IMG/VR virus record: IMGVR_UViG_3300036766_002289
Coordinates: 326,040 to 390,039 of that record
Reading direction: 5' to 3' (one strand)
Length of the DNA stretch: 64,000 nucleotides
Of this stretch, positions 12,839-31,885 are shown one piece after another. Both the position numbers and the translations under genes were made by a program. The notes beneath the pieces are model-generated. The model was not told the origin of the DNA and did not search any database. It saw only the letters and a program-made list of their open reading frames with translations. The stretch's first letter is position 1. Each line of letters opens with the position of its first letter.

Positions 12839-13252
12839 ATGCCGAAATACAGAGGAATAGTATACCCGCTAAGCAAGCATCATCAAGGGTTCTTGCATAA
12901 CGCTGACACGGATTTAGAGCAATTAAAATCCAATATGGCGACTATTATCTTGACAGAGCCTGGAGAACGGGTTTGCGAGCCTTATTACGGCACAATGATA
13001 CTTGGAGTCAACTTAAACAACCCTGAGCAAGTGGTGAAAGATACTTTTAGGCAGAATGTTGCAAAGGCTTTAAAAAGGTGGGAGAAAAGAATACAGGTTA
13101 ATGACGTTCAAATTAACCTCAACGTATACGAAGGTAATCTAATATTAATGATAAGTGTGTTCTTTATAGACCCTTTTAATTTAAAAAACAAAGAAGAATT
13201 GCACGTTCAAAAATCTCTTGGAGGAATTGATGGCAGACCTATGCCCTTTTGA
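12839..13252 (+). CDS. gp25: Baseplate wedge gp25-like
   Basis: LKSNMATIILTEPGERVCEPYYGT...ALKRWEKRIQV. Confidence 0.9.
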   Translation: MPKYRGIVYPLSKHHQGFLHNADTDLEQLKSNMATIILTEPGERVCEPYYGTMILGVNLNNPEQVVKDTFRQNVAKALKRWEKRIQVNDVQINLNVYEGNLILMISVFFIDPFNLKNKEELHVQKSLGGIDGRPMPF

Positions 13253-14807
13253 TGTAACACCTTTGGCAACTGCCAAAGTTATTAATAATACTCCTGTTTA
13301 TAATCTAAACTACACGAGTCAAGATTATAGCTCGATGAAGACAAGGTTATTAGAACTCATACATGCTAATTTCAATGATGAGTTCAATGATTTCACCGAA
13401 TCTAGTTTAGCGATGATGTTAATTGAATGCTGGGCTTGGTTAGCTGACCTGTTGTCGTTCAAGATCGACCAAATTGCTAATGAGTTATTCATTGATACTG
13501 TAACGGAGCCAGAGAATGCGTTCAGAATATCTAAATTAGTGGGTTTCAAACCTCAACCACCATTACCATCGAGAGCAATGTTTATAGCCTCTAAGAATAG
13601 CCCACATTCCTTAGACGTGTCAATGAAAACACCTGTTGTGGTACAACTAGAAACAGGGGTGAGTGAGATCAGGTATGAATTGTTTGCGGCGGACGTTAAT
13701 AACAATCCTATTTTTGGCCAGGATATAGTGATACCTGCTGGTAGTACCTTCAACAAGTCAGTAATAGGTTTAGAAGGTTCAAGTCATTCTGCAAATTACA
13801 AGAGTACTGGTAAGGCTAACCAAACTTATACATTGCCTTATCCTTCAGTATTTTATAACTCTATTCAAGTTAGGTCTGATGATTTGGTATGGGAGCAGGT
13901 AGAAAATTTCACGGAAGCAAAGGTTAGACCAGAATACATTGTTGAATACGATGCGGATTACAGGGCAAAAATTACTTTTGGCAATGGTAAGGCAGGACTG
14001 ATTCCACCCCAAAACTCAGAGATTAAGATTCTATTTAGAATAGCTAACAGAAATACAACTGAAATTATAACTGGAGCCTTTGAAAACAAAGTTCACGTTT
14101 CAGTGCCTGGTATACCACATGGAATTACAGTGGACTTTAAGAACTTCACGAAGAGTGATTATGGCTATCCAGGTGACTCTATCAATGAGATTAGGAAAAA
14201 ACTACCAAGTTTCCTAAGAACCCAAGATAGGGCTGTTACTGGTGCAGATTATAAATATCTAGCAAATAGATTTATGTCAGCACACAATGGTTCTATAGGA
14301 AAAGCTACAGCCGCGTTAAGAAATCATGGATGTGCTGGTAATATAATTGATATAATCGTTTTAGCTCAAACTGGAAATTGGAAATTAGTCAAGGCAAACG
14401 ATAATTTAAAGAGTGAATTATTAGAAGATTTAAATGGCAAGAAAATATTCACTGATTACCTTTGCATTAAAGATGGAGAAATAATCTTAACGGATATTCA
14501 TGTAGATATTGTGCTAGACAAAATCAATAAAAAGAATGAAGAAGCGGTTAAAAGAAAGATTGTAGAAATTTTAGATTGGTTTTTTGATCTACCAAATTGG
14601 GAATTTGGTCAATCGTTAAAAGAGTCAGATATAGTGAAAACGTTGGCTAGAGTTTCAGAAGTTAGAAGTTTTGAAATTGCTTTCGTGACTGCTAAAAATG
14701 TAAATACGGGGTCTACGGAGAATGTTTTAACTCCTAATTACAATGAGATCATAAGACCAGATAATATAATAATAAACTTTGTTTACAAATCTGCTGGGGA
14801 GTTATAA
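13230..14807 (+). CDS. gp6: Baseplate wedge gp6/baseplate J-like
   Basis: YTSQDYSS...FNDFTESS...DQIANE, ITFGNG, QDRAVTGADY. SD GGAGG before ATG 13230. Confidence 0.9.
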   Translation: MADLCPFDVTPLATAKVINNTPVYNLNYTSQDYSSMKTRLLELIHANFNDEFNDFTESSLAMMLIECWAWLADLLSFKIDQIANELFIDTVTEPENAFRISKLVGFKPQPPLPSRAMFIASKNSPHSLDVSMKTPVVVQLETGVSEIRYELFAADVNNNPIFGQDIVIPAGSTFNKSVIGLEGSSHSANYKSTGKANQTYTLPYPSVFYNSIQVRSDDLVWEQVENFTEAKVRPEYIVEYDADYRAKITFGNGKAGLIPPQNSEIKILFRIANRNTTEIITGAFENKVHVSVPGIPHGITVDFKNFTKSDYGYPGDSINEIRKKLPSFLRTQDRAVTGADYKYLANRFMSAHNGSIGKATAALRNHGCAGNIIDIIVLAQTGNWKLVKANDNLKSELLEDLNGKKIFTDYLCIKDGEIILTDIHVDIVLDKINKKNEEAVKRKIVEILDWFFDLPNWEFGQSLKESDIVKTLARVSEVRSFEIAFVTAKNVNTGSTENVLTPNYNEIIRPDNIIINFVYKSAGEL

Positions 14808-16637
14808 ATGGGCCGCAAGAAGTATACAGACAATCCTTCTGTCAACGATATTATTGTTTTCGACCTTAACACAGAAAACGATGACGGTCTGATTGCCGAC
14901 CCATTTTCCGTAGAAAAGATAACTATATTCTACCTAGAAAGAGGTTCGGGAAAAAATAACTTAAAATTAGAAAAAAAATTCAATAACCCAAGTTTACAAG
15001 AGCGGTATGATAGGCACAGAGAGATAGCTACAAGTGATCCTTCCCTAGATAACATCAAAATATTAAAGGACTTAAAAAACAGTCTAGACGCGACTGCTTT
15101 CACCACTCACATTTATTATAAAGAAGCTCAATTTGCCATGTCTACGCCAAGTCCCATATGGACAGCAGATGGTAAAGTAAGAAAGCTAGTTAATTTCGTT
15201 AATGAAAAAAAGCAAGTTTTGCCAGGAAGATTTTATTTTGCATGGCAACCGAAAGGTATGAGAGAAGGAACCTACATTATTAGATGGGAGTGGAAACTCG
15301 AAGAAAGTGGTACTATAAGAGCCGCAGAAAAAACTTTCACTATAAGTGCAGACCCCGAAGAGATTAAAAGCAACAACCTTAATCTAGCCCCAGAGGAGAA
15401 GTATGATTTTCTTTTGAGAAAGTACATGCCAACGATGTATCAAGTAAAGACTAAGCCCAATGATTTAACACCATATGTTTTAGAAAAACTAAATAAGTCT
15501 GTAGGTAAAGGATTTCAAGAAATAGAGAACATAGCAATCCAGCTTTCTACTTTACTCGACCCAGATACAATCAAAACTGATTTTCTACCTTTGCTTGCGA
15601 ACACTTTTGGTTTGACTTTAAGATCAGAGGACTCTGACGCATGGCGAAATCAAATAAGATATGCCCTCAATTTGTATAAAAAGAAAGGCACTTATGAAGG
15701 TTTAAGACAAGCCTTGGATAAGGCTAAGATTACTCTATTAAAACTAACTAATCTCTGGCAGGTTGTCTCCCGCAACATGTGGACAGATGGATTTTTGATT
15801 GACAGGGACATAAATCTTGAGACATTGATATTGGGTTATTTAACCAAAAAGCCAATTAATGATTTAGAAATAGAAATTCGTTCATCGGAAGATTTAAATT
15901 ATATAAAACTACCAAAAGAGATCATTAGTTTGCAGGAAGTGCAAGCCCCAGAAACGAAGACTGCTATTATCTGGCAAGGCGGCAATATTACGCCACAGAT
16001 ACCTTTACTAAAAGGGGATGTTATCAAGATAAGGTATGCATACAAAGATATACCAGATAGCGATTTAGCTATAGAAAAATATATAGACTCTTTGCCATTA
16101 GCGGATCAACGGGATGAAGCAGAGATAAAATACCCGCTCAAGAACTGGAACATAAAACTAATAGAAGAGGATGATCCTTTATTTAGTTTACTCATTACAG
16201 ATAGAAATCCTTTTCAGAGTCCAGTTGTGTTCGGCAAAATCAGGACAACATTCCTTTACAGTGAAAAGGTGTTCAACATGGATACCTACAATGGTAGTTT
16301 ATTCAACTCGAACAATCCATGTGATTTAGATAAAGATTTTATTGATACTTGTCATGGTGGTAGAAGCAGTAAGTTTAACGTTCATTTGGAATTTGATAAT
16401 GTTACTAATGATAAAATAAAAGAAGCTAAAGAAATAATCATAGATTATTCACCATTTCATGCTATGTTACATAACATAATCATAAGCAGTAAGACAACGG
16501 ACTATATCTTGCCCCCTATCGAGTCAATCAATAGCAGCATAAAAGAAAATAATAACAAGGACAAGGTTGGTGTAGGCGAGAATATAAACTGCAAAATCAA
16601 GTATAAAGACGGGAAAACAATAGAAGGGAGATTATGA
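14808..16637 (+). CDS. Baseplate protein gp7/P2-I-like
   Basis: FLPLLANTFG...WRNQIRYALNLYKKKGT-EGLRQAL tail protein I motif. Confidence 0.75.
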   Translation: MGRKKYTDNPSVNDIIVFDLNTENDDGLIADPFSVEKITIFYLERGSGKNNLKLEKKFNNPSLQERYDRHREIATSDPSLDNIKILKDLKNSLDATAFTTHIYYKEAQFAMSTPSPIWTADGKVRKLVNFVNEKKQVLPGRFYFAWQPKGMREGTYIIRWEWKLEESGTIRAAEKTFTISADPEEIKSNNLNLAPEEKYDFLLRKYMPTMYQVKTKPNDLTPYVLEKLNKSVGKGFQEIENIAIQLSTLLDPDTIKTDFLPLLANTFGLTLRSEDSDAWRNQIRYALNLYKKKGTYEGLRQALDKAKITLLKLTNLWQVVSRNMWTDGFLIDRDINLETLILGYLTKKPINDLEIEIRSSEDLNYIKLPKEIISLQEVQAPETKTAIIWQGGNITPQIPLLKGDVIKIRYAYKDIPDSDLAIEKYIDSLPLADQRDEAEIKYPLKNWNIKLIEEDDPLFSLLITDRNPFQSPVVFGKIRTTFLYSEKVFNMDTYNGSLFNSNNPCDLDKDFIDTCHGGRSSKFNVHLEFDNVTNDKIKEAKEIIIDYSPFHAMLHNIIISSKTTDYILPPIESINSSIKENNNKDKVGVGENINCKIKYKDGKTIEGRL

Positions 16638-17140: not shown

Positions 17141-18184
17141 ATGAAAAAACATATAGCATTCCCACCGTTGACGCCTATTCAATTAGAAGTAATAAATGGA
17201 GCATTACTTGGGGATGGTTCATTGCACCATATTAAAAACACTAATGCAAATTGGAAATTTGTAACAAGTCAGAGTGCGTATGACAATAAAGGAATTGATA
17301 AATCAACTTATATGCAATATATCTTCGATGCATTGCAGCCATATAGCAGTAAATTAGCAAAATATGATAACAACAACACGATTTTAAACATAAATGGCAG
17401 GATGATAAATTTACATAAGGAAGATGACAAAAAATATCATTCGCTTACAACTCATTGTCATCCTGTCTGGACAAATATGGCAAAAGATTGGTACTTATGG
17501 AAAAATGGAAATCTAGTTTTAAAAGATAATAAAATAATTAAAATAGTTCCAGAAGAATTAAAATTGACGCCTCTTACATTGTGTATTTGGTTCATGGACG
17601 ATGGATCATTGGATAGCAAAAGAGGAAATGCTACTATACACACTGAAGGTTTTACTGTGAACGAATGCAATTTATTAATAGAAAAGTTAAAAGATGTTGG
17701 CATATTTGCCAAATTAAAATTCAAAAAAACATATCCTATAATTTTTATTGGGATTAAATCATATTACAAGTTATTGAGTTTAATTACGCCCCATGTGCAT
17801 TGGTCATGCTTCCAATATAAAATAGACAAATCATACTCTAAAAAACATCAACAAGGCGAACATCATTCACAAAGCAAACTGACGGAAATAAAAGTTAAAA
17901 AAATCATTGCATTATACAACGAAGGAATATATCAAAAAGATATTGCAAAACAATTCAATATATCACAAGCTACTATTTCGGAAATAGTAACTGGTAAAAA
18001 TTGGAGTCATTTAAATTTGGGTACTCCTGGAAGAAGGTTTTCTAAACTTTCTATGGACCAAAACCAATTAATCATAAAGGAAGTTAGAACAGGTGCAAAA
18101 CAAAAAGATATTGCTCAAAAATTCAATATAGATCAGTCAACTGTTTCTAAAATACTCAAAAATGTACAAATTATATCAATATAA
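17141..18184 (+). CDS. Free-standing LAGLIDADG homing endonuclease with C-terminal duplicated HTH
   Basis: GALLGDGSL and WFMDDGS motifs, two QKDIA.F(N).Q.T.S.I HTH repeats. Confidence 0.9.
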   Translation: MKKHIAFPPLTPIQLEVINGALLGDGSLHHIKNTNANWKFVTSQSAYDNKGIDKSTYMQYIFDALQPYSSKLAKYDNNNTILNINGRMINLHKEDDKKYHSLTTHCHPVWTNMAKDWYLWKNGNLVLKDNKIIKIVPEELKLTPLTLCIWFMDDGSLDSKRGNATIHTEGFTVNECNLLIEKLKDVGIFAKLKFKKTYPIIFIGIKSYYKLLSLITPHVHWSCFQYKIDKSYSKKHQQGEHHSQSKLTEIKVKKIIALYNEGIYQKDIAKQFNISQATISEIVTGKNWSHLNLGTPGRRFSKLSMDQNQLIIKEVRTGAKQKDIAQKFNIDQSTVSKILKNVQIISI

Positions 18185-19237: not shown

Positions 19238-19882
19238 ATGTCAAATAATTTAGAACTTTTCGAGAAAATCAATGTTTTAGTAGAAAAAGCACCTGAAAAT
19301 AGGCACAGTTACTACCAGTTGAAACACTTCATAATCGGTAAACAGCCTACCACACAATCACAATTATGGCAATGCCTAACGGAATTACAATCCAGAAAAG
19401 AAACAATTGATAATTTAACCATGCAAGTAGAAGACTTACGTGATGATTTGCTACTTTTACAAATTAAGGAGTCTAAGGTCAAAGTCGTTTATAGCGAAGA
19501 TGAGCAAGAAAAAGAAATTAAGCAGAGAAAAAGAGAAAGAAAAAGAGAATCAATTGTCAAAACTATAAATAAACTAGAAAAACAACTTGAGTTCGTTGTG
19601 CAGGAAGCAAGATTTTTCGTACAGGCTTTTGAAGCTATAGAGGAAGTGGAAAAATTAAAGGATTTTGATGATTACGATGCCCAAAAGGAACTTTGGGAAG
19701 CCAAGGTTTCAGAAGAAATCAATCTAAGGTTGCTATTCCATCAGCCTTTAAGTCCAGATACTTTAAAAACTGCATTATCGCTTCACGATGAGTCTAGGGT
19801 TAAGAAAGAAGTTTTAAAAATGATAGAAGTTGTAGAAAAAGCGAATATTAAAATGTTAGGAACTAAGAAAAAAGGGGAATAA
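19238..19882 (+). CDS. Coiled-coil hypothetical protein (possible fibre chaperone)
   Basis: SD AAGGAG and TAAATA upstream, charged heptad-like segment, translationally coupled to the PKD gene. Confidence 0.55.
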   Translation: MSNNLELFEKINVLVEKAPENRHSYYQLKHFIIGKQPTTQSQLWQCLTELQSRKETIDNLTMQVEDLRDDLLLLQIKESKVKVVYSEDEQEKEIKQRKRERKRESIVKTINKLEKQLEFVVQEARFFVQAFEAIEEVEKLKDFDDYDAQKELWEAKVSEEINLRLLFHQPLSPDTLKTALSLHDESRVKKEVLKMIEVVEKANIKMLGTKKKGE

Positions 19883-20874
19883 TGAAGAATAAGCTTTCTT
19901 CGGGTGTAGACTATAAAAGTGGAACATTATCAGTATTTCCTAAAGGTAAAGATTCTAAACTAAACCTACATGAAGCCAAAAATAATGCCGAAGACGTACT
20001 TCGACAAACATTAGCCATCAATGGCAAAACCATGTTGTTGAATGACGCTAGTAAGTTCCCAAATAGTGGCATCATTAAAATAACCCCTGCCAGTTCAACA
20101 AATCTCCTAGATTCTTTCGAAGTCATCTTTTATGCCAAAAAGACTGGCAATCATTTATTGATGCTGCATAGAGGCTATGGTGGTTCACCAATAAACACAT
20201 GGCCTGCTGGCAGTAAGGTTTCTTGCCCATTAATGGCTGAGCATCACAACGTACTAAAAGACGCTGTAATGCAAATTCAAAAGAAGATCGGGGAAAAAAC
20301 TAATCCTTCTTCAGATTCAATCAATGGCATTTTGAATTATTTGGAAAATAAGTGGTTAGCCCCTAAGCCAGTTTTTAGGGCTTATCCGAGAATGGGACCA
20401 GCCCCTTTGCCTGTAACCTTTCACAACTTTTCTACTGGATTTGGTGGTAGATTCTTATGGGATTTTGGAGATGGTACGAGTAGCACAGAGAAAAATCCCA
20501 CACACATTTACCATGACGAAGGTAAATACAAAGTCAGGCTTACAGTCATTTCTGTCAATGGTTCACAAGGATTAACAGAAAAAGGCGATTACGTTGAAGT
20601 TAACAATGAGCAACTTCCTTCATTTTTTTATGTTACACCTTTACAAGGTTCTATAACAACAGAATTTGAATTAGTAGATCAAAGTGACGGTGACATAGCA
20701 GAGCGTCATTGGTTTTTTGGTGATGGTACAGACGTTACCGTTAGCAATCCTAATATCCACTCTGTTATACATCGTTATGAAAAAGAAGGTAATTACATTC
20801 CTTCACTGATGATAAGACTAGCGAACAACAAAACAAAGAGAGTACATTTGCCAGAAGGAATTATAGTAATATGA
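19882..20874 (+). CDS. Virion protein with two PKD domains
   Basis: FLWDFGDGTSSTEKNPTHIY and WFFGDG...HRYEKEG-Y. Confidence 0.85.
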   Translation: MKNKLSSGVDYKSGTLSVFPKGKDSKLNLHEAKNNAEDVLRQTLAINGKTMLLNDASKFPNSGIIKITPASSTNLLDSFEVIFYAKKTGNHLLMLHRGYGGSPINTWPAGSKVSCPLMAEHHNVLKDAVMQIQKKIGEKTNPSSDSINGILNYLENKWLAPKPVFRAYPRMGPAPLPVTFHNFSTGFGGRFLWDFGDGTSSTEKNPTHIYHDEGKYKVRLTVISVNGSQGLTEKGDYVEVNNEQLPSFFYVTPLQGSITTEFELVDQSDGDIAERHWFFGDGTDVTVSNPNIHSVIHRYEKEGNYIPSLMIRLANNKTKRVHLPEGIIVI

Positions 20875-22976
20875 GTTATCCGTTTAAGTTTGATACAGAT
20901 TCTGAACTATACTTGGTAAAAGACGCTTTAATAGTGCCATTAAGTGTGGACCATCATCCTGGGCAAAACATGATTATTGCGGATGGAGACATAAGTAAAT
21001 TCCCACTAAAAGGCATTATAACTCTCGTTGACCAAGACAGTCCAGCACATGAAAGAGCAGTGTCTTTTCATTATGGTCGTAGAACAAGTAGAGAATTTTT
21101 GGACTTGGAATTAACAGATAACTCTGTTGATTGTTTCAAACCTAGAAAATTCACCGTGATTACTATGCAGGTAATGCGAGAACACCGTGAAGCAATCAAA
21201 AATGCCATTTTTGAAATAGAAAAATTCTTAGGCCCAAAACATAAAGTAGATACTGAACCTAACGGAGATACTATATTCGGAAGGATTAACTTTTTAAGAA
21301 AAATACTATTTGCCCCTAAAGCATGGTTTGAAGCTGACAAGGTAACTGGAGCAGCACCTTTTACTGTAAATTTTACATTCACTGGTACTGGCAATACGGG
21401 ACCAGTGGGAGATGTATTATATATATGGAATTTTGGTGGTGATGATGAAACACAAACCACTGAACCTAAAATAGAAAAACTGTTCTTAGACGCTGGCAAT
21501 AAAACAATATCACTGACTATTAAAAATGAGTATGGTGAAGATTCAGTATCTTTCCCAGATATGATTAAGGTCAAAGGTCAAGCACCAGAACAAGCCCTTA
21601 TTAGATTTTCGCCACAACAGCAGCAGCTTAATTTCATGCAAAATGATGTTATGCCTAAGATCAGAACACAGATTCGCCAGCCAGTGACAATCGAAATACC
21701 ACAAAAAATGGTAAGTGATAAAAGAACTTTTGCTGGGGAAATGATCGACCCCAATACTTCAAGGGTGGCAGATGCGATTACAAATTATACATGGAATTTA
21801 GGTGACGACTTACCACATGCAAATTCGCCAAAGACTAAAGCACTATACAGTGTGGGTGGATTGTATGATTTAGTGGTCAGGACTGATACTGCGTCTGGAA
21901 CTCACAGAACTACTGTTTATCCTAACGCAATAGATGTTGTAGAATCTGTCAATTTATGGTTATGGACTATCAACAATACTGCAATTAGGTCACATGAATT
22001 TGGACTTTTAAGCGAAGTGTTTAAAACTTCCAGCAACACTTCAGAGATCGAAATAAATGATTCTTTTATCGACATGCCCCACACCAGAGAAAAATTTGAG
22101 TTCTGGCGTAATAATGGCTCGGCAAAAAAGAATGAAATGAAATCTGGACAGGGTGGTGATTTACTAATGTATTGGGCAAGTGGTAGGGACAAAGGATACG
22201 ACCCAATTGCAGAAAAGATCAATTTCACCCAATATAATGGATTCGCAGACACTTATACTACCAAAGATTCCATCCCAGGCAAGCCTTGGAATTGGGTGTC
22301 TTTAGCTAGCAACAGTAAAATATACTTTATTCTTGGTGGCAGTCTTAATGGGCCTATGCCCACTTTATCAATGACTAGTCAAACAAAAAGTACTTATGAC
22401 ATGGATTCTTCAACAATCATCAATGAAGAAATTGAATATAGGAACTACAAAAATGGTGCGCACGATCTAATGAAACATCCTGATGTTTTTGATTCAAATT
22501 TTGACGCCGCACATGGTTATTTTGCTGCTTACAGGACAGCCTGGAAAAACAATACAGGATACATAATCAGGAATTCATCTTTAGGCGAATACTTCTCTTT
22601 CCATGATTTTTACAGAACAGAAGGCACAATCGGTTTACCTTGTCAAAACATAGTGAAGCTGCCAAATTTACCTGGCGATAACCATAAAGACGGCGATTTA
22701 GTAGCATTGAATAAAGGCATATACTTCTTTAACAATTCTGGAATGACTTACTGTTTTGACGGGTCCGCTGGTACTTGGGAGCTAGTGACACCGCATAATA
22801 AGGTGGCTATCAATGACTTGGATGGTTTGATGGCAACCTCCGACTTGGATTCTAAGGCTTATATGGTTTTGGAAGGTGTTAATAACGGATTTATTAAATT
22901 CAACGAACTAGATATGTCTTATACAACATTGAATCAAAAACCACTAGATAAACAGTGGCACATCACACTTTTTTAA
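20871..22976 (+). CDS. Virion protein with PKD domains and beta-propeller-like C-terminus
   Basis: G-APFTVNF...YIWNFG and YTWNLGD. N-terminal domain paralogous to the neighbouring genes. Confidence 0.75.
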   Translation: MSYPFKFDTDSELYLVKDALIVPLSVDHHPGQNMIIADGDISKFPLKGIITLVDQDSPAHERAVSFHYGRRTSREFLDLELTDNSVDCFKPRKFTVITMQVMREHREAIKNAIFEIEKFLGPKHKVDTEPNGDTIFGRINFLRKILFAPKAWFEADKVTGAAPFTVNFTFTGTGNTGPVGDVLYIWNFGGDDETQTTEPKIEKLFLDAGNKTISLTIKNEYGEDSVSFPDMIKVKGQAPEQALIRFSPQQQQLNFMQNDVMPKIRTQIRQPVTIEIPQKMVSDKRTFAGEMIDPNTSRVADAITNYTWNLGDDLPHANSPKTKALYSVGGLYDLVVRTDTASGTHRTTVYPNAIDVVESVNLWLWTINNTAIRSHEFGLLSEVFKTSSNTSEIEINDSFIDMPHTREKFEFWRNNGSAKKNEMKSGQGGDLLMYWASGRDKGYDPIAEKINFTQYNGFADTYTTKDSIPGKPWNWVSLASNSKIYFILGGSLNGPMPTLSMTSQTKSTYDMDSSTIINEEIEYRNYKNGAHDLMKHPDVFDSNFDAAHGYFAAYRTAWKNNTGYIIRNSSLGEYFSFHDFYRTEGTIGLPCQNIVKLPNLPGDNHKDGDLVALNKGIYFFNNSGMTYCFDGSAGTWELVTPHNKVAINDLDGLMATSDLDSKAYMVLEGVNNGFIKFNELDMSYTTLNQKPLDKQWHITLF

Positions 22977-23004: not shown

Positions 23005-26000
23005 ATGCCAAAGGCAATCCCAAAACCAGTATACCCAATTGCTTTAGATTCAAATTACACTCTATTTAGCACACATAATAGTGCGCAAACTCTCCTTGCC
23101 AAAGATTTAAGCATTACCAGTGATGTAATAGAAATCTATCCTAAGAGTGCTAATGATGCCGATGTTTGGGCCGAAAATGGTTTTGTCACGATTGAGAAAG
23201 AAATTATCTACTATGACAGTGTTACCAAAGATAAAAACAGCAAAATAACCCAATTAAAAGACTGCATAAGGGGAGTAGAAGGAGAAGTTAAAGCGTATGT
23301 CTCTGGCACTGCTATTTACGCAAACGTCGTTGCCCAATTACATAACCAATTAGTGGATGCAATCGTAGCCATAGAAAGCACAATTGGTGATATTTCTGAC
23401 ATGCTGAAGGTTGGAAATGACCTCAAAACACAGCAAAAAGTCAGAAAAAACCTTGTGCCTAAAAACATGGCAATGACTCAAATGGACACAGCCTTTACTG
23501 CGTCATTGCATCAGAATTTAACCGCGATGCTAGGTTGCGCTCCAGTTCCAGATGATGCTTGCCCAGATGTGGAATTTGAATTCAACATTCTAGGTTCTAC
23601 TGCTGAGTATTGTGTAAGAATTTTTGGAGATTATACAGCATTTGAAGTCGATTTTGGTGATGGTAATTCAACTACAACTCAATTGTCTGGCACCATAACA
23701 TTCAATGGAGGTAATCCCACAGTAACAGTCACAACCCCAACATGCACCCTTGTACAAATGCCGACAACTCCAGATGGTTGCGAAGCACCAGTATTGCCTA
23801 ATCCTTCAATTCCTTTTGTAATTGCGGTACCGTTTATACCAGATTGGCCTGGCTTTACTCCAAACAAGAATATATGTCCAGGTCCATTGTTCAGTTTGCC
23901 ACCAATTCAGTTTCCTAAATCTGAACTATGTTCTGTAATACCTAGTACATGCATCCCAAGTGTAATTATTTCTGTTATAGAATCCTGCAAGACCCCACAG
24001 ATCATCAGAATTGTCAGTCCTTGTAGAATCAGCATTATATCCTTAGTAGGATGTGAATTGCCTAGCATTATATCCCTAGTAGGGTGCTGTCCGCCTAGTA
24101 TAATCAGTGTAATTGCACCTAGTTTTAATTGCATAAGTTTCTGTCAGGTTCCAAGTTTTGAATGCATAAGTTTTTGCCAAGTCCCAAGCTTTGACTGCAT
24201 AAGTTTTTGTATGCCGCCGAGCATGGCCCCTGTTAGTTTTGCACCATTCCCAAGCATTGGTACTGTGTCTTTTGATGTTGCTATAAGCCTAAGCCCATTA
24301 TGCTTCTGCGAACCACCGAGTTTTGCACCTATTAGCTTTACTCCGTTCCCAAATATTAGCGCTGTATCGTTTGATGTTAATGTCGCATTGAGCTTAAGCC
24401 CAATATGCTTCTGTGAACCGCCAATTATTAGTTTTGCTCCATTCCCAAGCATAGGCGCTGTATCTTTTGATGTTGCTATAAGCTTAAGTCCATTATGCTT
24501 CTGCGAACCACCGAGTTTTGAGAAGATAAGTTTTGCTGAATTCCCGAGCGTTGGGAAAATATCATTCGATATCGCTGTTGAATTGAGTTTGAGTCCAATA
24601 TGTTTTTGTGACCCACCTAGTTTTGTGTGTATTGATTTTTGCACTCCACCAAGTTTTGGGATTGTTAGCTTTGCTCCGTTTCCAAGTATAGGGGCTGTAT
24701 CATTTGATGTTAATGTCGCACTGAGCCTAAGTCCAGTATGTTTCTGTGAACCACCTAGTTTTGCAGCTATTAGCTTTAATCCGTTCCCAAGCATAGGTGC
24801 GGTATCGTTTGATGTAATGCTTAGTTTGACTCCGTTGTGTTTCTGTGAACCACCTAGTTTTGCAGCTATTAGCTTTGCGCCGTTCCCAATCATAGGCCAA
24901 GTGTCATTTGATGTTGCTATAAGTCTAAGCCCATTATGTTTCTGTGAGCCACCAAGTTTTCAGTGCATTAGTTTTTGTCCACCACCTAATTTCGACCAAG
25001 TAAGTTTCGCACCTATAAGTTTTACTTCTTTCCCGAGCATTGGGACTGTATCGTTTGACGTTGCTATAAGTCTAAGCCCATTATGTTTCTGTGAGCCACC
25101 GAGTTTTTCTCAAATTAGTTTTGCACCATTCCCAAGTATAGGGATGGTGTCTTTTGACGTTCTCCTAAACGCAAGTTTGACTCCAATATGTTTCTGTGAG
25201 CCGCCAAGTTTCCAATGTATTAGTTTCTGCCATGTGCCTAGTTTTGATGTTGTTAGTTTTACTACACCACCAAGCTTCCACTGTGTAAGTTTCTGTGAAC
25301 CACCAAGCTTTAGCTTGATAAATTTTGCTACACCACCGAGCATTGTACCGATTAGCTTTGCACCATTCCCGAGCATTGGGACTGTATCCTTTGATGTTGC
25401 TTTGAACGCAAGTATAAGTCCTATATGTTTTTGCGAACCACCGAGTTTTTCACTTATTAGTTTTGCACCATTCCCAAGCTTGGGGGTAGTATCTTTCGAT
25501 GTGCTTTTAAATTTGAGCCTAAGTCCAATATGTTTCTGTGAAGTGCCAAGCTTTGCATGTATTAGTTTTTGTGAATTCCCAAGCATTGGCAAAGTATCTT
25601 TTGATGTTTTATTAAGTTTAAGTCCAGTTAGTTTTACTACGCCACCAAGCTTCCATTGTGTAAGTTTCTGTGAGCCACCAAGCTTCCATTGTGTAAGTTT
25701 CTGTGAGCCACCAAGCTTCCATTGTGTAAGTTTCTGTGAGCCACCAAGCTTTAGTTTAGTAAATTTTAATGCACCGCCAAGTTTTGCACTTGTTAGCTTT
25801 GCTCCATTTCCAGAAATTGGCAAGGTTTCATTCGACGTTATGTTGAATGCTAGTTTAAGTCCAGTATGTTTCTGTGAACCACCAAGCTTTGAATGCATAA
25901 GTTTCTGTCCTACTCCAAACTTTAACTTAGTGAGTTTTACTACTCCACCAAGTTTTCAATGTATAAGTTTTTGTGAGCCGCCAAGCTTTGGATGTGTGAG

Positions 26001-27339
26001 TTTTTGCGCACCACCAAGTTTTAGCTTAGTAGGATTTACTGCTCCACCAAGTATTGCACCTATTAGTTTTGCTCCGTTCCCAACAGTATCAACAGTGTCA
26101 TTTGACGTTATTGTAGACTTAAGTTTGAGTCCAATATGTTTCTGCGAACGACCGAGCTTTGATGCCATAAGCTTTGCCCCATTCCCAAGTATTGGTGCTG
26201 TATCTTTCGATGTTGCATTAAACTTAAGTTTAACTCCAATATGTTTTTGTGAGCCACCGAGCTTTAGTTGTGTAAGTTTCTGTACCCCAAGCTTTAACTT
26301 GGTGAGTTTCGCCACTTTGAGTTTTGATAAAGTATCATTTACAGTACCAAGCTTCGCTTGTGTAAGTTTTTGCAGCCCACCAAGCTTTGAGAAAATAAGT
26401 TTTACTGAATTCCCAAGTGTTGGTAAAGTATCGTTCGATATTGCAGTAGACTTAAGTTTAAGTTCTATATGTTTCTGTGACCCACCAGTTTTTCAGTGTG
26501 TCAGTTTCTGTCCACCACCATCATTTAATGATGTAAAGTTTGACGTTGCACTAAATTTAAGCTTAACTCCAGTATGTTTTTGTGAGCCACCGAGCTTTGA
26601 TTGCATAAGTTTTTGTGAGCCACCAGATTTTGATTGCGTAAGTTTTTGTCCTGTGCCGAGCTTCGATTGTATAAGTTTCTGCACACCACCAACTTTTGCA
26701 CCTATAAGTTTTACAACCCCAAGTTTTGGGCTTATTAGTTTTGATAAGCCACCGACTATAAGTGTTGTATGGGGAACACCGCCGCCATTATCGTGTACTG
26801 TGACTGTGGCGTGCCCATCGTCTTCAGGGTTTAGTAGTCCTAATCCATTTGGAAGTGCTGCACCTCAAACAGATTCTGATTTTAGTGAAGATTTTGACAT
26901 GAATGTACCTCTCACTTATAAAGACTTAGGTATACCAGAAGAAATTAGGCTTATAGGCCCTGACTTGCCTAGAGAAATATTTATTAGGGGTATAATTCCT
27001 GATGAAATTACAATCAAGGGAGATATACCAAGAAGCATTGAAGTTCATTCTGATATACCGCATAAGATCATGTTGGATGCAACGGATGTACCTAGAAAGA
27101 TCATGGTAGAGATGGCCCCTAATTTCCCATCCACATTAAGAATGGATGTTACGCACACTCTACAGGTCACAGGGATACCAAAATCTATAGAAATAATTGA
27201 AAATATTCCTAGAACTATTCAATTATTGATGCCAGAGAATCCAGTAGTTGAATTGAAATTCAATCAGGTGGATATAGAACTGAAACCAAGTGCGGACCTA
27301 GAAAAAATGTTTTCTAATTTAATGATCCCGCTTAAATAA
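23005..27339 (+). CDS. Giant Cys/Ser/Pro/Phe repeat protein, putative tail fibre
   Basis: Shared N-terminal anchor domain, one PKD-like DFGDG, about 950 aa of PPSFxC(I/V)SFC and PFPSIGxVSFDV..LSLSPxCFC repeats, IPxxI repeats at the C-terminus. SD AAGGAG. Confidence 0.65.
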   Translation: MPKAIPKPVYPIALDSNYTLFSTHNSAQTLLAKDLSITSDVIEIYPKSANDADVWAENGFVTIEKEIIYYDSVTKDKNSKITQLKDCIRGVEGEVKAYVSGTAIYANVVAQLHNQLVDAIVAIESTIGDISDMLKVGNDLKTQQKVRKNLVPKNMAMTQMDTAFTASLHQNLTAMLGCAPVPDDACPDVEFEFNILGSTAEYCVRIFGDYTAFEVDFGDGNSTTTQLSGTITFNGGNPTVTVTTPTCTLVQMPTTPDGCEAPVLPNPSIPFVIAVPFIPDWPGFTPNKNICPGPLFSLPPIQFPKSELCSVIPSTCIPSVIISVIESCKTPQIIRIVSPCRISIISLVGCELPSIISLVGCCPPSIISVIAPSFNCISFCQVPSFECISFCQVPSFDCISFCMPPSMAPVSFAPFPSIGTVSFDVAISLSPLCFCEPPSFAPISFTPFPNISAVSFDVNVALSLSPICFCEPPIISFAPFPSIGAVSFDVAISLSPLCFCEPPSFEKISFAEFPSVGKISFDIAVELSLSPICFCDPPSFVCIDFCTPPSFGIVSFAPFPSIGAVSFDVNVALSLSPVCFCEPPSFAAISFNPFPSIGAVSFDVMLSLTPLCFCEPPSFAAISFAPFPIIGQVSFDVAISLSPLCFCEPPSFQCISFCPPPNFDQVSFAPISFTSFPSIGTVSFDVAISLSPLCFCEPPSFSQISFAPFPSIGMVSFDVLLNASLTPICFCEPPSFQCISFCHVPSFDVVSFTTPPSFHCVSFCEPPSFSLINFATPPSIVPISFAPFPSIGTVSFDVALNASISPICFCEPPSFSLISFAPFPSLGVVSFDVLLNLSLSPICFCEVPSFACISFCEFPSIGKVSFDVLLSLSPVSFTTPPSFHCVSFCEPPSFHCVSFCEPPSFHCVSFCEPPSFSLVNFNAPPSFALVSFAPFPEIGKVSFDVMLNASLSPVCFCEPPSFECISFCPTPNFNLVSFTTPPSFQCISFCEPPSFGCVSFCAPPSFSLVGFTAPPSIAPISFAPFPTVSTVSFDVIVDLSLSPICFCERPSFDAISFAPFPSIGAVSFDVALNLSLTPICFCEPPSFSCVSFCTPSFNLVSFATLSFDKVSFTVPSFACVSFCSPPSFEKISFTEFPSVGKVSFDIAVDLSLSSICFCDPPVFQCVSFCPPPSFNDVKFDVALNLSLTPVCFCEPPSFDCISFCEPPDFDCVSFCPVPSFDCISFCTPPTFAPISFTTPSFGLISFDKPPTISVVWGTPPPLSCTVTVACPSSSGFSSPNPFGSAAPQTDSDFSEDFDMNVPLTYKDLGIPEEIRLIGPDLPREIFIRGIIPDEITIKGDIPRSIEVHSDIPHKIMLDATDVPRKIMVEMAPNFPSTLRMDVTHTLQVTGIPKSIEIIENIPRTIQLLMPENPVVELKFNQVDIELKPSADLEKMFSNLMIPLK
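23950..26790 (+). repeat. Degenerate coding tandem repeat array (11-aa and ~28-30-aa modules)
   Basis: Visible in protein and DNA. Boundaries approximate. Confidence 0.95.
25642..25740 (+). repeat. Three exact 33-nt tandem copies
   Basis: CCACCAAGCTTCCATTGTGTAAGTTTCTGTGAG x3 (PPSFHCVSFCE). Confidence 0.95.
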
Positions 27340-27341
27340 TT

Positions 27342-28172
27342 ATGAAAATAAAAAAGCATAGAAATAAAAACGATTACGCGCTTGCTAATAGTGGCGTTTG
27401 GGTAAGAGATTTTACTAAACCTTTAATCAGAAGTTTAGATATAAACAATCTAATTTCAATTCCAGACATGCAAATCATGTTAGAAAATGAAATTAAGAAT
27501 CATGATAAACTATATCAAAAAATAGAGACGGAAGATTTCAATCATGATAAAATTGTAATTATTGGAGATGGTTATAAACAAAAAGAAAAACAAAAACTAC
27601 TAGAAAGCTTGCCTGCCGATGTTCTGGTCATAGGTGTGAATAAGGCATTTGCCATGTGGGAATGTAATCACCGTTTAAATTACTATGTAGTTAACAACCC
27701 TTACGATGAATGTTTATTCTATTACCCGCCTTCTGTAAAATATTGGCCAAAATGTATTGCCTCCACGAGGACAAATCCAGACTTTTTAAGGAATTATCGT
27801 GGGACGACTTACTTATACAATCCAGTGCCTGATGAAATTTATAGTGGTATTAGGACTGAGAGTAATTATTTTGTGGACGATTATAGAAATCCAGTTTGTG
27901 CAGCACTATGCTTGGCTTATAAGTTTAAAGTTAAGAAACTCTTACTACTATCATTGCTGGACTTATATGAAGAAGAACGGCCAGGGACAGAACAGCATAA
28001 AGGTTTATGGATTTATCCACAACAAAAAACTGCGCAGTCTATAATTGATGCTAATTTATATTGGTTACAAAAAGCAAAAATTAGCGTAACTTACAATGAT
28101 AGCGGCCCAGATTATGAGTTTGCTTCATATATAACCGATAGCGAGGTCAAAGGATATTTCAATGTCAAATAA
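27342..28172 (+). CDS. Maf/DUF115/sialyltransferase-like glycosyltransferase (putative)
   Basis: IVIIGDG...VIGVN...AALCLAY.FKVKKLLLL.LLD follows the IIGNGPS...GVN...A..LA...G.K.I.L.G.D pattern. Confidence 0.55.
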   Translation: MKIKKHRNKNDYALANSGVWVRDFTKPLIRSLDINNLISIPDMQIMLENEIKNHDKLYQKIETEDFNHDKIVIIGDGYKQKEKQKLLESLPADVLVIGVNKAFAMWECNHRLNYYVVNNPYDECLFYYPPSVKYWPKCIASTRTNPDFLRNYRGTTYLYNPVPDEIYSGIRTESNYFVDDYRNPVCAALCLAYKFKVKKLLLLSLLDLYEEERPGTEQHKGLWIYPQQKTAQSIIDANLYWLQKAKISVTYNDSGPDYEFASYITDSEVKGYFNVK

Positions 28173-29589: not shown

Positions 29590-29628
29590 AAACCCAAGCT
29601 ATGAAAAATAGCTTGGGTTTTATTTTTT
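29590..29628 (+). terminator. Rho-independent terminator
   Basis: AAACCCAAGCTAT-GAAAA-ATAGCTTGGGTTT then TATTTTTT. Confidence 0.85.
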
Positions 29629-29644
29629 GACACTCATTTAAATC

Positions 29645-30643
29645 ATGTTCAAAATAAAAAAGCCACCTAAAAACGATGGCAAAATGTCTATAAAAGAATT
29701 CTACGGGAAAAGAAATAAAGTCTTGTTGATTAGAAATGCAAGAGGTATAGGAGATATTCTCAACTGTAGAATGCTATTCAAAGCTTTCAAAGACATGATG
29801 CCAGAAGTATATCTGGTATTCGCGTGCTTCAAAGAGTATAAAAGCCTAGTACAGGATCATCCTTATATAGATGAAGTTGTTGATGTAAGAACTGTAGTAA
29901 AAGAAGACTACCTAATATCTTATGACATAAGCACTTGCTGCATATATCATGAGTCTCTGAAAGCAACCAAAAACGAGACACATAGAGCAGATATTTGGGC
30001 TGAACACTGTGGTTTAACTATTGAAGAACATGACATGTTTTTACCATATATAGACCCAGAAATACTCTCATGTGGACATATCAGAATACAACAACTTAAA
30101 AAAACTAGTTTATCAAGCAATAGGCATGGCCCTACTGTGCTGCTATGTACTAAGGCACATGACGTGCAAAGGTCGCTTACGCAAAGCCAAACTGTAGCTT
30201 TAGTAGAAATATTGAGACGAAAAGGTTTATTTGTATATTCGACTCACATCTCAGATTTACCATTACTCGAAAGCTTGGGAGTACCAGTTTTAAAAGATGC
30301 ATCTCTTGAAGAATGGATGAGTTACATTCATGCTGCGGACTATGTTGTTACGGTTGATACGGGGACTTTTCATTATGCGGGCGGAATTAAGAAACCATTA
30401 ATGGGTATTTTTACTCACGTAGACGGCAAATTAAGAGGTAAATATTATGATTTTGTCCTAGTACAAAAGCATAGAGATAATGGTAATTGGCCATGTGGTC
30501 CATGCTATACTTTCATCAATTGCACCAATCCAAGGTGTAAAGACCCCAACTCTCTACATGAGTTAAAACCCTGCTTGACTGAGATAACTGTGGAAGAAAT
30601 GGAAAAAGGAGTAGATAAAATGTTGCAAGTATGGCCTATATAA
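29645..30643 (+). CDS. GT9 (ADP-heptose:LPS heptosyltransferase-like) glycosyltransferase
   Basis: RGIGDIL...HPYIDEV...IHAADYVVTVDTGTFHYAGGIKKP..GIF. Confidence 0.9.
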   Translation: MFKIKKPPKNDGKMSIKEFYGKRNKVLLIRNARGIGDILNCRMLFKAFKDMMPEVYLVFACFKEYKSLVQDHPYIDEVVDVRTVVKEDYLISYDISTCCIYHESLKATKNETHRADIWAEHCGLTIEEHDMFLPYIDPEILSCGHIRIQQLKKTSLSSNRHGPTVLLCTKAHDVQRSLTQSQTVALVEILRRKGLFVYSTHISDLPLLESLGVPVLKDASLEEWMSYIHAADYVVTVDTGTFHYAGGIKKPLMGIFTHVDGKLRGKYYDFVLVQKHRDNGNWPCGPCYTFINCTNPRCKDPNSLHELKPCLTEITVEEMEKGVDKMLQVWPI

Positions 30644-30868: not shown

Positions 30869-31885
30869 ATGCCAATCGGTGCAGATATAGGTACCTACAA
30901 TCTTGTAATGTGTACTAGAAATAAAGACGGCGGTTATATTTATGACCGAGAAGTAAACGCATTCCTTGAAATAGCACTAGAAGACCGCATGGTTCTAGAA
31001 ATGATGCGCACTTGCGACGACCCCGTACCCGTTATAGAAAGAGCAACCAAAGCTTACGCTCTTGGAGAAAAAGCGGTTCGTATGGCTTATACGTTATCAC
31101 AACTTGAACTTAAAAGACCTATGAAAGATGGTTGTGTCAATCCAAAAGAAAAAGATGCCTATGAAGTCATGAATATGATGTTACACAGTCTTCTTGAAGG
31201 TAATGTCAAAACCGATAAAGATGTTATTTACTATAGTGTTCCTGCAAATGCTTTGAATGAAGAAACAGACGCTGATTATCATTCTAAAATGTTGGCATCT
31301 ATGTTGGAAGCATATAAGTCAGATGAAGGATTTACAGTAACACCATTTCCTATTAATGAAGGATTAGCCCTTGTTTACGCAGAACTTAAATCTAACAACT
31401 ATACTGGTATCGGGATAAGTTTCGGTGCTGGAATGGTCAATTTATGCTTTGCAATGTTCGGTGTTCCTGTATTTCAGTTTGCACTAGTAAATTCAGGAGA
31501 CTGGATAGATAAAATGGCCGCGAAAGCAACTGGAGAAGGTATAACTTTTATTAACCAAGAAAAAACCAAGATGAATTTGTCAAAAGAACCAAAAGACTTG
31601 GTAGAACGTGCAATACAAACTCAATACAAAATAATGATAGAAAAAACAGTAAATGGAATCAAAAAGGGGTTAGGAGAAAGTGGCAAAAAGGCGCGCTCAG
31701 ACAAGCCTATTGACATAGTGATTGCAGGCGGCACATCAATTCCTATTGGATTCGATGTACTTTTCAGAGATGTAGTCCAGCAAGCAAACTTGCCTATTAG
31801 TGTTGGGTCTATAGTAAGGCCCAATGACCCGCTATACAGTGTGAGTCGTGGCTGTTTAATAGCAGCTGAAAACTCATTGAAATAA
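30869..31885 (+). CDS. Actin-fold ATPase (MreB/ParM/FtsA superfamily)
   Basis: Phosphate1 IGADIGT, connect1 INEGLA, phosphate2 ISFGAGMVN, adenosine IVIAGGTS, connect2 DPLYSVSRG. Confidence 0.85.
   Translation: MPIGADIGTYNLVMCTRNKDGGYIYDREVNAFLEIALEDRMVLEMMRTCDDPVPVIERATKAYALGEKAVRMAYTLSQLELKRPMKDGCVNPKEKDAYEVMNMMLHSLLEGNVKTDKDVIYYSVPANALNEETDADYHSKMLASMLEAYKSDEGFTVTPFPINEGLALVYAELKSNNYTGIGISFGAGMVNLCFAMFGVPVFQFALVNSGDWIDKMAAKATGEGITFINQEKTKMNLSKEPKDLVERAIQTQYKIMIEKTVNGIKKGLGESGKKARSDKPIDIVIAGGTSIPIGFDVLFRDVVQQANLPISVGSIVRPNDPLYSVSRGCLIAAENSLK

What the first reader, a model, noticed from the sequence alone, without database searches (positions are those of the whole stretch)
23005..27339. 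1444-aa Cys-Pro-Phe-Ser modular repeat fibre
Seen: about 950 aa built from two interchangeable modules, A = PPSFxC(I/V)SFCx (11 aa) and B = PPSFxxISFAPFPSIGxVSFDV(AL)xLSLSPxCFCE. They occur in irregular order, with very few basic residues and regular CxC motifs, followed by a separate IPxxI repeat domain. I recognise no known fibre family like this. Inference: a trimeric beta-helix/spiral with axial metal or disulphide ladders (compare the His-coordinated iron of T4 gp37), whose length and module order can be shuffled.
Basis: partly seen in the sequence, partly recalled or inferred. Interest (0 to 1): 0.75.

Follow-up and report, generated by a model that had tools for sequence, protein, structure and literature searches.

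The report
Cysteine-paired repeat tail fibre of jumbo phage
This 1,444-residue gene most likely encodes a baseplate-attached tail fibre of an uncultured 390-kb phage from sediment; its shaft is about 80 copies of an undescribed 11-residue repeat, with cysteines strictly in pairs, and its fold is still unknown.

Summary
Window 23005-27339 (+) is one 1,444-aa ORF. Residues 352-1248 are about 80 copies of a single 11-residue unit, x-P-S-F-x-x-(I/V)-S-F-x-x, in four flavours.

The gene lies in the baseplate block of a 390-kb uncultured phage. It belongs to a family of at least 268 protein clusters with no Pfam, PHROG or PDB match apart from a PKD domain. All members share four parts:
- an N-terminal anchor (beta domain, long helix, PKD domain);
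- a Pro-Ser repeat shaft;
- an invariant W..P...C-x5-C junction;
- an IPxxI-repeat C-domain.

Cysteine enrichment is confined to one subclade. There, cysteines occur almost only as pairs within a unit: C6+C10 or C8+C10, with one lone cysteine in 255 units. Close relatives differ by whole units: 944, 1,444, 1,844 and 1,877 aa, and two are identical except for 33 aa.

Three structure predictions gave no confident fold for the repeats, so trimer, beta-helix, disulphide and metal all remain untested. There is no HxH motif, and most relatives lack the cysteines. That argues against an essential gp37-like metal ladder and for optional cross-links.

A Maf/MptE-like glycosyltransferase-fold gene always follows the fibre gene.

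The parts
23005..27339 (+). Whole fibre gene, 1,444 aa
   Evidence: ORF list and translation; 100% match to its own genome at G000:349044-353375; RBS upstream
23062..23430 (+). N-terminal anchor: beta domain (aa 20-106) plus long helix (aa 108-142, HNQL motif at 113)
   Evidence: AlphaFold2 with 71-sequence alignment, pLDDT about 95 over aa 30-100; VIA-align Z 8.4-8.9 to chains of phage tail-tip, baseplate and portal-tail complexes; BFVD hits named tail fibre or baseplate; most conserved part of the family
23557..23769 (+). PKD-like Ig domain (aa 185-255, DFGDG at 216)
   Evidence: Family profile hits collagenase PKD domains, E 2.8e-5; Foldseek probability 1.0 to PKD structures; 40 of 71 family members hit PF18911; pLDDT 93-97
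24058..26748 (+). Shaft: about 80 units of the 11-residue repeat x-P-S-F-x-x-(I/V)-S-F-x-x (aa 352-1248). Four flavours: Cys unit A (C6+C10), Cys-free unit, FPSIG unit, CFC tail unit (C8+C10)
   Evidence: Segmentation and position-specific counts; TRF periods of 33/99/105 bp
25641..25751 (+). Three identical 33-bp copies (PPSFHCVSFCE x3): a recent duplication
   Evidence: TRF 100% matches; identical DNA units; the one spot not bridged by independent contigs
26749..26817 (+). Family-invariant junction: W1256, P1260, C1264, C1270 (C-x5-C)
   Evidence: Invariant columns W29, P33, C37, C43 in the 48-sequence alignment A2; positions in the window protein
26929..27336 (+). C-terminal IPxxI-repeat domain (aa 1309-1444), conserved across the family
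   Evidence: Alignment A2, mean column identity 34%; nine motifs spaced 10-11 aa; no Pfam, PHROG or PDB match
27342..28172 (+). Next gene: 276-aa protein with an MptE/Maf-like glycosyltransferase fold. It starts 2 nt after the fibre stop codon
   Evidence: Atlas feature score 0.97 and TM 0.81-0.83 to MptE-like and Maf clusters; it is the next gene after the fibre in L003, L004, L006 and L007; sequence at the stop/start. The Pfam HMM itself does not reach E 0.01
19882..20874 (+). 330-aa PKD protein that shares the fibre's N-terminal anchor domain (paralogue)
   Evidence: BLASTP E 2e-8 over aa 18-138 against 9-129; PKD hits; conserved position in relatives
20871..22976 (+). 701-aa PKD protein, conserved immediately upstream of the fibre gene
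   Evidence: PF18911 E 6e-12; synteny
13218..16637 (+). Baseplate wedge genes (gp6-like and P2 gpI-like) that place the block in the baseplate module
   Evidence: phrog_219 E 2e-30; PF09684 E 1e-12

Best explanation
The gene encodes a long baseplate-attached tail fibre of an uncultured contractile-tailed phage of about 390 kb from sediment. It is an expanded, cysteine-rich member of a widespread but undescribed fibre family of large uncultured phages.

Shown:
- The N-terminal beta domain, helix and PKD domain are the conserved attachment end. A neighbouring 330-aa protein shares this domain.
- The middle is a shaft of about 80 copies of one 11-residue unit. Pro2, Ser3, Phe4, Ile/Val7, Ser8 and Phe9 are held by purifying selection.
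- The C-terminal junction and IPxxI domain are conserved family-wide.
- Shaft length changes by gain and loss of whole units.

Inferred:
- The units are short beta strands separated by Pro turns.
- The chains associate side by side, probably as a trimer as in most fibres.
- Small residues at positions 6, 8 and 10 (Cys, Ala, Ser, Thr, Asp) line a tightly packed face.
- In this subclade, about 36 levels of that face carry a Cys pair that cross-links the shaft. Disulphides formed after lysis are the default. Thiolate-metal sites are the alternative. The cross-links stiffen and protect a very long fibre and are not needed for the fold.
- The conserved C-domain acts as the folding and registration nucleus, or as a docking end, rather than as a hypervariable receptor tip.
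For: Context:
- gp6-like wedge, P2 gpI-like protein and gpV-like hub lie upstream; TerL lies downstream.
- The block P2_I / 154 aa / 175 aa / 222 aa / PKD330 / PKD701 / fibre / Maf-like keeps its order in relatives whose proteins are only 27-43% identical.

Family:
- 268 clusters at E <= 1e-3. Most are 600-800 aa, with matches at both ends of the query.
- Conserved N-domain and C-domain alignments.

Fibre nature:
- N-domain model with pLDDT about 95.
- Best structural matches are phage tail-tip, baseplate and tailspike chains, and BFVD proteins named tail fibre, baseplate wedge initiator or Peptidase S74.
- P0002 has the same N-domain on a PF00608-type shaft.
- The PKD330 paralogue shares the anchor.

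Repeat under selection:
- Position-specific conservation.
- Diverged codons at identical residues.

Cys pairing:
- 255 units: 144 without Cys, 71 with C6+C10, 39 with C8+C10, 1 with a lone C10, and none with a lone C6 or C8.
- The family-wide invariant junction is also a pair, C-x5-C.

Lineage restriction:
- All 7 members with at least 4% Cys in the middle region fall in one 100/100-supported clade of 12. The other 59 have 0-3%.

Length change:
- 944, 1,444, 1,844 and 1,877 aa. L003 and L004 are identical except for a 33-aa, three-unit indel.

Precedent for cysteine cross-links in phage tails: phage Milano (PMC10811340) and transient tailspike disulphides in P22 (PMC3357383).
Against: - No virion proteomics or imaging exists, because the phage is uncultured.
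- Oligomeric state and fold are unknown: the trimer run gave 'no answer' and the monomer models are poor.
- The best structural match of the N-domain is a 116-residue chain of the GP4 portal-tail complex. I could not establish which protein that chain is. GP4-type small fibre proteins form dimers (PMC13730344), so a trimer is not assured.
- Z scores of 8-9 are close to the background for this aligner.
- No thiol oxidase (Erv, DsbA) was found in the genome; only a thioredoxin was.
- The source samples are sediments. If they are anoxic, spontaneous disulphides are not assured.
- A conserved C-terminal domain is unusual for a receptor-binding fibre.
Confidence: 0.55

Rival explanations
1. One reading: a trimeric needle with an axial ladder of metal ions held by CxC/CxxxC cysteines from the three chains, analogous to the His-coordinated iron sites of the T4 gp37 tip.
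For: - Two cysteines per unit, with C10 constant and its partner at position 6 or 8. These positions would lie on one face of a strand.
- Sediment origin, where reduced thiols and metals are plentiful.
- No oxidase gene in the genome.
Against: - No HxH and only 5 His in the repeat region.
- No sequence match to any solved fibre.
- Cys positions are freely replaced by Ala, Ser, Thr or Asp in 144 of 255 units, and in the shafts of 59 of 71 family members placed on the tree. Metal sites therefore cannot be what holds the fold together.
- Six-thiolate octahedral sites are not a known fibre motif (own knowledge).
Confidence: 0.12
2. A glycosylated stalk. The near-invariant serines (S3 and S8 of every unit) are O-glycosylated by the translationally coupled Maf/MptE-like enzyme, with further glycosyltransferases downstream. 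The fibre is then a sugar-coated, protease-resistant rod. This can coexist with the cross-link model.
For: - The Maf/MptE-like fold gene starts 2 nt after the fibre stop and is the next gene in four other loci.
- A GT9-like gene lies nearby and is conserved in L006.
- Ser is 17% of the shaft. S3 is present in 222 and S8 in 189 of 255 units.
- Virion glycosylation by phage enzymes is known in mycobacteriophages (Freeman et al. 2023, as cited in PMC12619734).
Against: - The Pfam MptE-like HMM does not reach E 0.01 on this protein.
- No NeuB or CMP-sugar synthetase gene was found in the genome.
- The whole block is syntenic, so adjacency alone is weak evidence.
- The conserved Ser could be purely structural.
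Confidence: 0.2
3. Not a projecting fibre but a baseplate or tail-surface tie. Both conserved ends dock on the particle, and the variable shaft spans a lineage-specific distance, like a garland or strut.
For: - Both ends are conserved at about the same rate while the middle varies.
- The C-domain is not hypervariable.
- Milano shows disulphide-linked accessory proteins around its fibres (PMC10811340).
Against: - Near-identical relatives differ by 33 aa, and closer clade members range from 944 to 1,877 aa. That is hard to reconcile with spanning a fixed distance.
- P0002 replaces the whole distal part, C-domain included, with a different shaft.
Confidence: 0.1
4. An assembly or annotation artefact: a collapsed or chimeric repeat, or a non-coding low-complexity region.
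For: - The three identical 33-bp copies are not bridged by independent contigs.
- Long antisense ORFs exist inside the repeats.
Against: - Independent contigs match the rest of the gene with no mismatch.
- Homologues with the same architecture occur in many samples.
- The codon-level pattern indicates purifying selection.
Confidence: 0.02

Closest known systems
T4 gp37 long-tail-fibre tip (HxH iron sites; Bartual et al. 2010, own knowledge)
   Same: A long phage fibre. A short side-chain pair on one face of a strand recurs along the axis and could point at the oligomer axis.
   Different: No HxH, and cysteine instead of histidine. No sequence match. An 11-residue unit repeated about 80 times. 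The pairs are dispensable in most relatives.
Adenovirus/reovirus triple beta-spiral shaft (Pfam PF00608)
   Same: A repeat shaft with a conserved Pro and alternating hydrophobic residues. A relative (P0002) carries a PF00608-type shaft on the same N-domain.
   Different: The window protein has no PF00608 hit. Its unit is 11 residues, not about 15. It is cysteine-rich.
Disulphide-crosslinked tail of Agrobacterium phage Milano (PMC10811340) and the transient cysteine annulus of the P22 tailspike (PMC3357383)
   Same: Cysteines in phage tail and fibre proteins that cross-link chains or guide trimer assembly.
   Different: In those phages there are a few specific cysteines in globular or beta-helix domains. 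Here there are about 36 regularly spaced pairs in a repeat array. No homology was detected.
Collagen cystine knots (collagen III CC; FACIT two-Cys junction; own knowledge, not tested)
   Same: Two cysteines per chain at one level is what a closed set of inter-chain disulphides needs. The family-invariant C-x5-C lies at the shaft/C-domain junction. Relative P0012 has CC doublets every 11 residues.
   Different: No Gly-X-Y repeat, so this is not a collagen helix. The likeness is in logic only.
Insect antifreeze beta-helix TmAFP (12-residue TCTxSxxCxxAx; own knowledge)
   Same: A short repeat with two cysteines per unit.
   Different: The Cys spacing is 6 there, against 4 or 2 here. Three bulky hydrophobic residues per 11-mer cannot fit inside a coil that narrow. 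No sequence match.

Membership tests
Undescribed fibre family of large uncultured phages (at least 268 clusters; defined here) | N-terminal beta domain plus helix with the HNQL motif | tested here: met
   H113, N114 and Q115 are invariant in 71 sequences; confident model
Undescribed fibre family of large uncultured phages (at least 268 clusters; defined here) | Invariant junction W..P...C-x5-C followed by an IPxxI-repeat C-domain | tested here: met
   Invariant W29, P33, C37 and C43 in alignment A2; the window protein is the first row
Undescribed fibre family of large uncultured phages (at least 268 clusters; defined here) | Position after two PKD proteins in the baseplate block and before a Maf-like gene | tested here: met
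PKD-domain proteins (PF00801/PF18911) | PKD Ig-like domain with the DFGDG-type motif | tested here: met
   The family profile hits ColH PKD at E 2.8e-5; Foldseek probability 1.0; 40 of 71 members pass. The window sequence alone is below E 0.01
T4 gp37-type metal-ladder fibre tip | HxH motifs along the shaft | tested here: not met
   No HxH and 5 His in aa 331-1255
T4 gp37-type metal-ladder fibre tip | Sequence or profile similarity to a solved fibre | tested here: not met
   No PDB match for the repeat region or for the B-module profile at E <= 10, beyond noise
T4 gp37-type metal-ladder fibre tip | Bound metal ions on the trimer axis | not testable with these tools
   Needs ICP-MS or a solved structure
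Triple beta-spiral shaft (PF00608) | Pfam match and a repeat of about 15 residues | tested here: not met
   No Pfam hit for the whole protein; the unit is 11 residues
Homotrimeric phage tail fibre (general kind) | Trimer formation | tested here: inconclusive
   ESMFold2 three-copy run: score 0.00, pLDDT 33, verdict 'no answer'
Homotrimeric phage tail fibre (general kind) | Encoded in the tail/baseplate module with a fibre-like N-terminal anchor | tested here: met
Maf/MptE-like glycosyltransferases (for the downstream gene 27342-28172) | PF01973 HMM match | tested here: not met
   No hit at E 0.01
Maf/MptE-like glycosyltransferases (for the downstream gene 27342-28172) | MptE/Maf fold | tested here: met
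   Atlas features 0.97 with 227 of 256 shared; TM 0.81-0.83 over 252-257 residues. Both sides are predicted models

The most novel reading that the evidence does not exclude
The 11-residue Pro-Ser-Phe unit builds a new kind of oligomeric beta shaft that current predictors cannot model. In this subclade about 36 rings of paired cysteines staple the chains together, covalently or through metal. The shaft serines are glycosylated by the coupled Maf-like enzyme. The result would be a cross-linked, sugar-coated fibre whose length is tuned in 11- or 33-residue steps.
Probability: 0.25. Interest if true: 0.75.

Novelty: new variant of a known kind. Interest (0 to 1): 0.55.

Why it matters
Tail fibres decide what a phage can reach and bind. 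Their shafts are also a source of unusual protein folds, such as the triple beta-helix, the beta-spiral and the iron-studded needle.

This family is common in large uncultured phages: at least 268 clusters at 50% identity. It has no entry in Pfam, PHROGs or the PDB, and three predictors failed on it. A solved fragment would therefore probably add a new repeat fold.

The strict pairing of cysteines, their restriction to one subclade, and the stepwise length changes give a natural series for testing how cross-links and length affect fibre mechanics. The constant Maf-like neighbour makes fibre glycosylation in large phages directly testable.

Tried and rejected
- Pfam and PHROGs on the whole protein and on 47-71 family members found only PKD.
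- PDB sequence searches with the N-domain, C-domain and B-module profiles and with the repeat region found only PKD, or noise.
- Megablast and tblastn against GenBank phages found only one uncultured 595-kb phage, LR756511.1. No cultured relative was found. The TerL of the nearest cultured phages is below 30% identical.
- ESM Atlas features for the repeat region: best score 0.79, which is a lead only.
- Trimer prediction: no answer.
- AlphaFold2 of aa 1114-1444 with a 47-row alignment: pLDDT 51, unusable, so no fold search was run on it.
- The Atlas model of family member P0022 is also poor.
- Searches for a dedicated disulphide-forming enzyme (Erv, DsbA) and for nonulosonic-acid genes (NeuB, CMP-transferase) in the genome found none. 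The Erv control found the family in none of the control genomes, so that negative result carries no weight.
- TmAFP-like narrow solenoid: rejected on geometry and Cys spacing.
- Collagen-like: rejected, because there is no Gly-X-Y.
- The antisense ORFs at 24144-24893 and 25110-25898 are by-products of the stop-poor repeats.
- The literature searches found no description of this repeat.
- I could not establish which protein chain 1 of 8jov is.

Full report
**1. Observation**

Window 23005-27339 (+) is a single ORF of 1,444 codons. It has a GGAG-type ribosome-binding site.

Residues 331-1255 are 17% Ser, 15% Pro, 15% Phe and 8.2% Cys, with 1.3% Lys+Arg and no Trp or Tyr. Residues 352-1248 carry 62 acidic and 10 basic residues.

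Cutting the sequence at the P-S-F anchors shows one underlying 11-residue unit, x-P-S-F-x-x-(I/V)-S-F-x-x, repeated about 80 times. It comes in four flavours:
- a Cys-free unit, PPSFxx(I/V)SF(A/T)x;
- an FPSIGxVSFDV unit;
- an 11-13-residue tail unit ending LSLSPxCFCE.

A junction and nine IPxxI motifs spaced 10-11 residues follow.

**2. The array is real and selected**

Independent k-mer contigs of the probable source run tile the gene with no mismatch. The exception is a gap inside three identical 33-bp copies at 25641-25751, whose copy number is therefore not independently confirmed.

Elsewhere the units are old. At identical residues only about 58% of codons agree between units. The motif is therefore maintained by selection on the protein, not by recent slippage.

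**3. Where it sits**

The window is the last 64 kb of a 390,039-bp virus record estimated to be 98% complete. Sequencing runs that hold the sequence are sediment metagenomes.

Upstream genes:
- a gpV-type hub at 10581-12830;
- a gp6-like wedge at 13218-14807;
- a P2 gpI-like protein at 14808-16637;
- two PKD proteins at 19882-20874 and 20871-22976.

TerL is at 42200-44044. Its closest GenBank relative is the uncultured 595-kb phage LR756511.1 at 67% identity. Cultured phages are below 30%.

The order P2_I / 154 aa / 175 aa / 222 aa / PKD330 / PKD701 / this gene / 276-aa gene is kept in two distant contigs of 217 kb and 127 kb, whose proteins are only 27-43% identical.

**4. The family**

A full-library phmmer search with the 944-aa orthologue P0001 found 268 clusters at E <= 1e-3 and 126 at E <= 1e-30. 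Typical members are 600-800 aa.

Alignments show three conserved features:
- an N-domain with H113, N114, Q115 and DFGDG invariant;
- an invariant junction W..P...C-x5-C;
- an IPxxI-repeat C-domain.

In between lie 10-11-residue Pro-Ser repeats such as IPSxIxF. No source gives any member a name other than 'hypothetical protein'. Pfam and PHROGs recognise only the PKD domain.

**5. The N-domain**

AlphaFold2 with 71 sequences gives three elements:
- a confident beta domain at aa 25-106, with pLDDT about 95;
- a helix at aa 108-142;
- a PKD-like sandwich at aa 185-255.

The PKD assignment is supported.

The beta domain's best structural matches are chains of phage tail-tip, baseplate and portal-tail complexes (8jov_1, 8rk3_o, 8vjh_A; Z 8.4-8.9). 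That is only just above this aligner's background. Among viral models, 43 hits have E <= 1e-3. Their names include tail fibre, baseplate wedge initiator, Peptidase S74 and lambda Stf.

The upstream 330-aa PKD protein shares this anchor domain at E 2e-8. Relative P0002 joins the same N-domain to an unrelated shaft that hits the adenovirus shaft family. Together with the gene context, this makes a baseplate-attached fibre the best reading.

**6. The shaft fold is unresolved**

Three predictions failed:
- three copies of aa 1114-1444 folded by ESMFold2 scored 0.00 at pLDDT 33, and the tool says this counts neither for nor against;
- AlphaFold2 of the same segment as a monomer with 47 sequences reached pLDDT 51;
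- the ESM Atlas model of family member P0022 has pTM 0.21.

Neither the repeat region nor a B-module profile matches any PDB chain.

The sequence itself shows hydrophobic residues at positions 4, 7 and 9 and small residues at 6, 8 and 10. In an extended strand both faces would then be partly buried. That suits a multi-chain or multi-layer beta structure. This is inference only.

**7. The cysteines**

I scored 255 units from the window protein and three close relatives:

| Cys pattern in the unit | Units |
|---|---|
| none | 144 |
| C6 + C10 | 71 |
| C8 + C10 | 39 |
| lone C10 | 1 |
| lone C6 or lone C8 | 0 |

Cysteines therefore come as pairs with a constant partner at position 10. The family-wide invariant junction is also a pair, C-x5-C. 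Relative P0012 uses CC doublets every 11 residues.

On a tree of N-domains, all members with at least 4% Cys in the middle region fall in one clade of 12, supported 100/100. The other 59 have 0-3%. The pairs are therefore an addition to an existing shaft, not part of what defines its fold.

There is no HxH and only five His in the repeat region. This weakens the gp37 analogy.

Pairs per chain are what a closed set of inter-chain disulphides in a symmetric oligomer needs, as in collagen cystine knots (own knowledge). They are equally what bidentate metal ligation needs. I found no Erv or DsbA gene, only a thioredoxin. The sediment origin leaves the redox state open.

Cross-linked phage tails are known in phage Milano (PMC10811340). 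P22 tailspike assembly uses transient disulphides (PMC3357383).

**8. Length and order**

Four IMG/VR relatives share 78-81% identity in the N-domain. The complete ones are 1,877 and 1,844 aa, and those two are identical except for a 33-aa, three-unit indel. P0001 has 944 aa.

Module strings differ between the window protein, L003 and P0001. Neighbouring genes of L003 are 63-88% identical to the window's, while the fibre as a whole is about 59% identical.

**9. The neighbour**

The 276-aa gene starts 2 nt after the fibre stop. The first strong terminator-like hairpin downstream is at 29590-29620.

The Atlas places the protein with MptE-like and Maf glycosyltransferase clusters: features 0.97, TM 0.81-0.83. 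The Pfam HMM does not reach significance. No NeuB or CMP-sugar synthetase gene was found.

It is the next gene after the fibre in all four loci that extend past the fibre gene. A GT9-like gene follows. With Ser3 and Ser8 nearly invariant, O-glycosylation of the shaft is a testable lead and not a finding.

**10. Verdict**

This is a real and unusual protein. It is best read as an expanded, cysteine-paired member of an undescribed tail-fibre family of large uncultured phages.

The kind, a modular phage fibre, is known. The repeat, its paired cysteines and probably its fold are not. Trimer, beta-helix, disulphide and metal remain to be tested.

Noticed in passing
window 30869-31885 (+): A 338-aa actin homologue of the Volactin family (PF25216, E 1e-65; weak MreB hit). 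It is 59% identical in the distant relative L006, where neighbouring proteins are only 27-43% identical, so it is unusually conserved for this phage group.
   Followed up: partly
window 27342-28172 (+): A protein with an MptE/Maf-like glycosyltransferase fold. It starts 2 nt after the fibre stop and is the next gene after the fibre in L003, L004, L006 and L007. A GT9-like gene lies at 29645-30643.
   Followed up: partly
window 17141-18184 (+): A LAGLIDADG homing endonuclease with HTH domains sits between baseplate genes. It is present at the same place in L007 but absent from L003, L004 and L006, so it is a mobile insertion.
   Followed up: partly
window 19882-20874 (+): The 330-aa PKD protein shares the fibre's N-terminal anchor domain (E 2e-8). 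At least two products therefore probably dock at the same kind of site.
   Followed up: partly
window 27341/27349, in run X2: A 90-95% identical relative in another sediment sample has 772 extra bases between the fibre stop and the next gene. Its repeat region matches the window only in patches.
   Followed up: no
P0002 (NCBI, 1,081 aa) and P0143 (1,480 aa): The same N-domain is fused to quite different distal parts. P0002 has adenovirus-shaft-like GCGL repeats (PF00608). P0143 has a long Cys- and Pro-rich region of another type. This is domain swapping at about residue 310-330.
   Followed up: no
family alignment A2, extreme C-terminus: Most family members end in a second conserved Cys pair with the same spacing, C-x5-C (consensus CFxxVPC). 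The window's clade has lost it.
   Followed up: no
window 2585-3523 (+): An HNH endonuclease-like ORF (phrog_559, E 4e-25) lies just upstream of the tail block.
   Followed up: no
G000 as a whole: IMG/VR classes the 390-kb record as 'provirus'. Every window gene I annotated (baseplate, fibre, TerL) is phage-like. I did not look for host flanks.
   Followed up: no
window 24144-24893 and 25110-25898 (-): Long antisense ORFs of 249 and 262 aa lie inside the repeat array. They are most likely by-products of the stop-poor repeat sequence and not genes.
   Followed up: no
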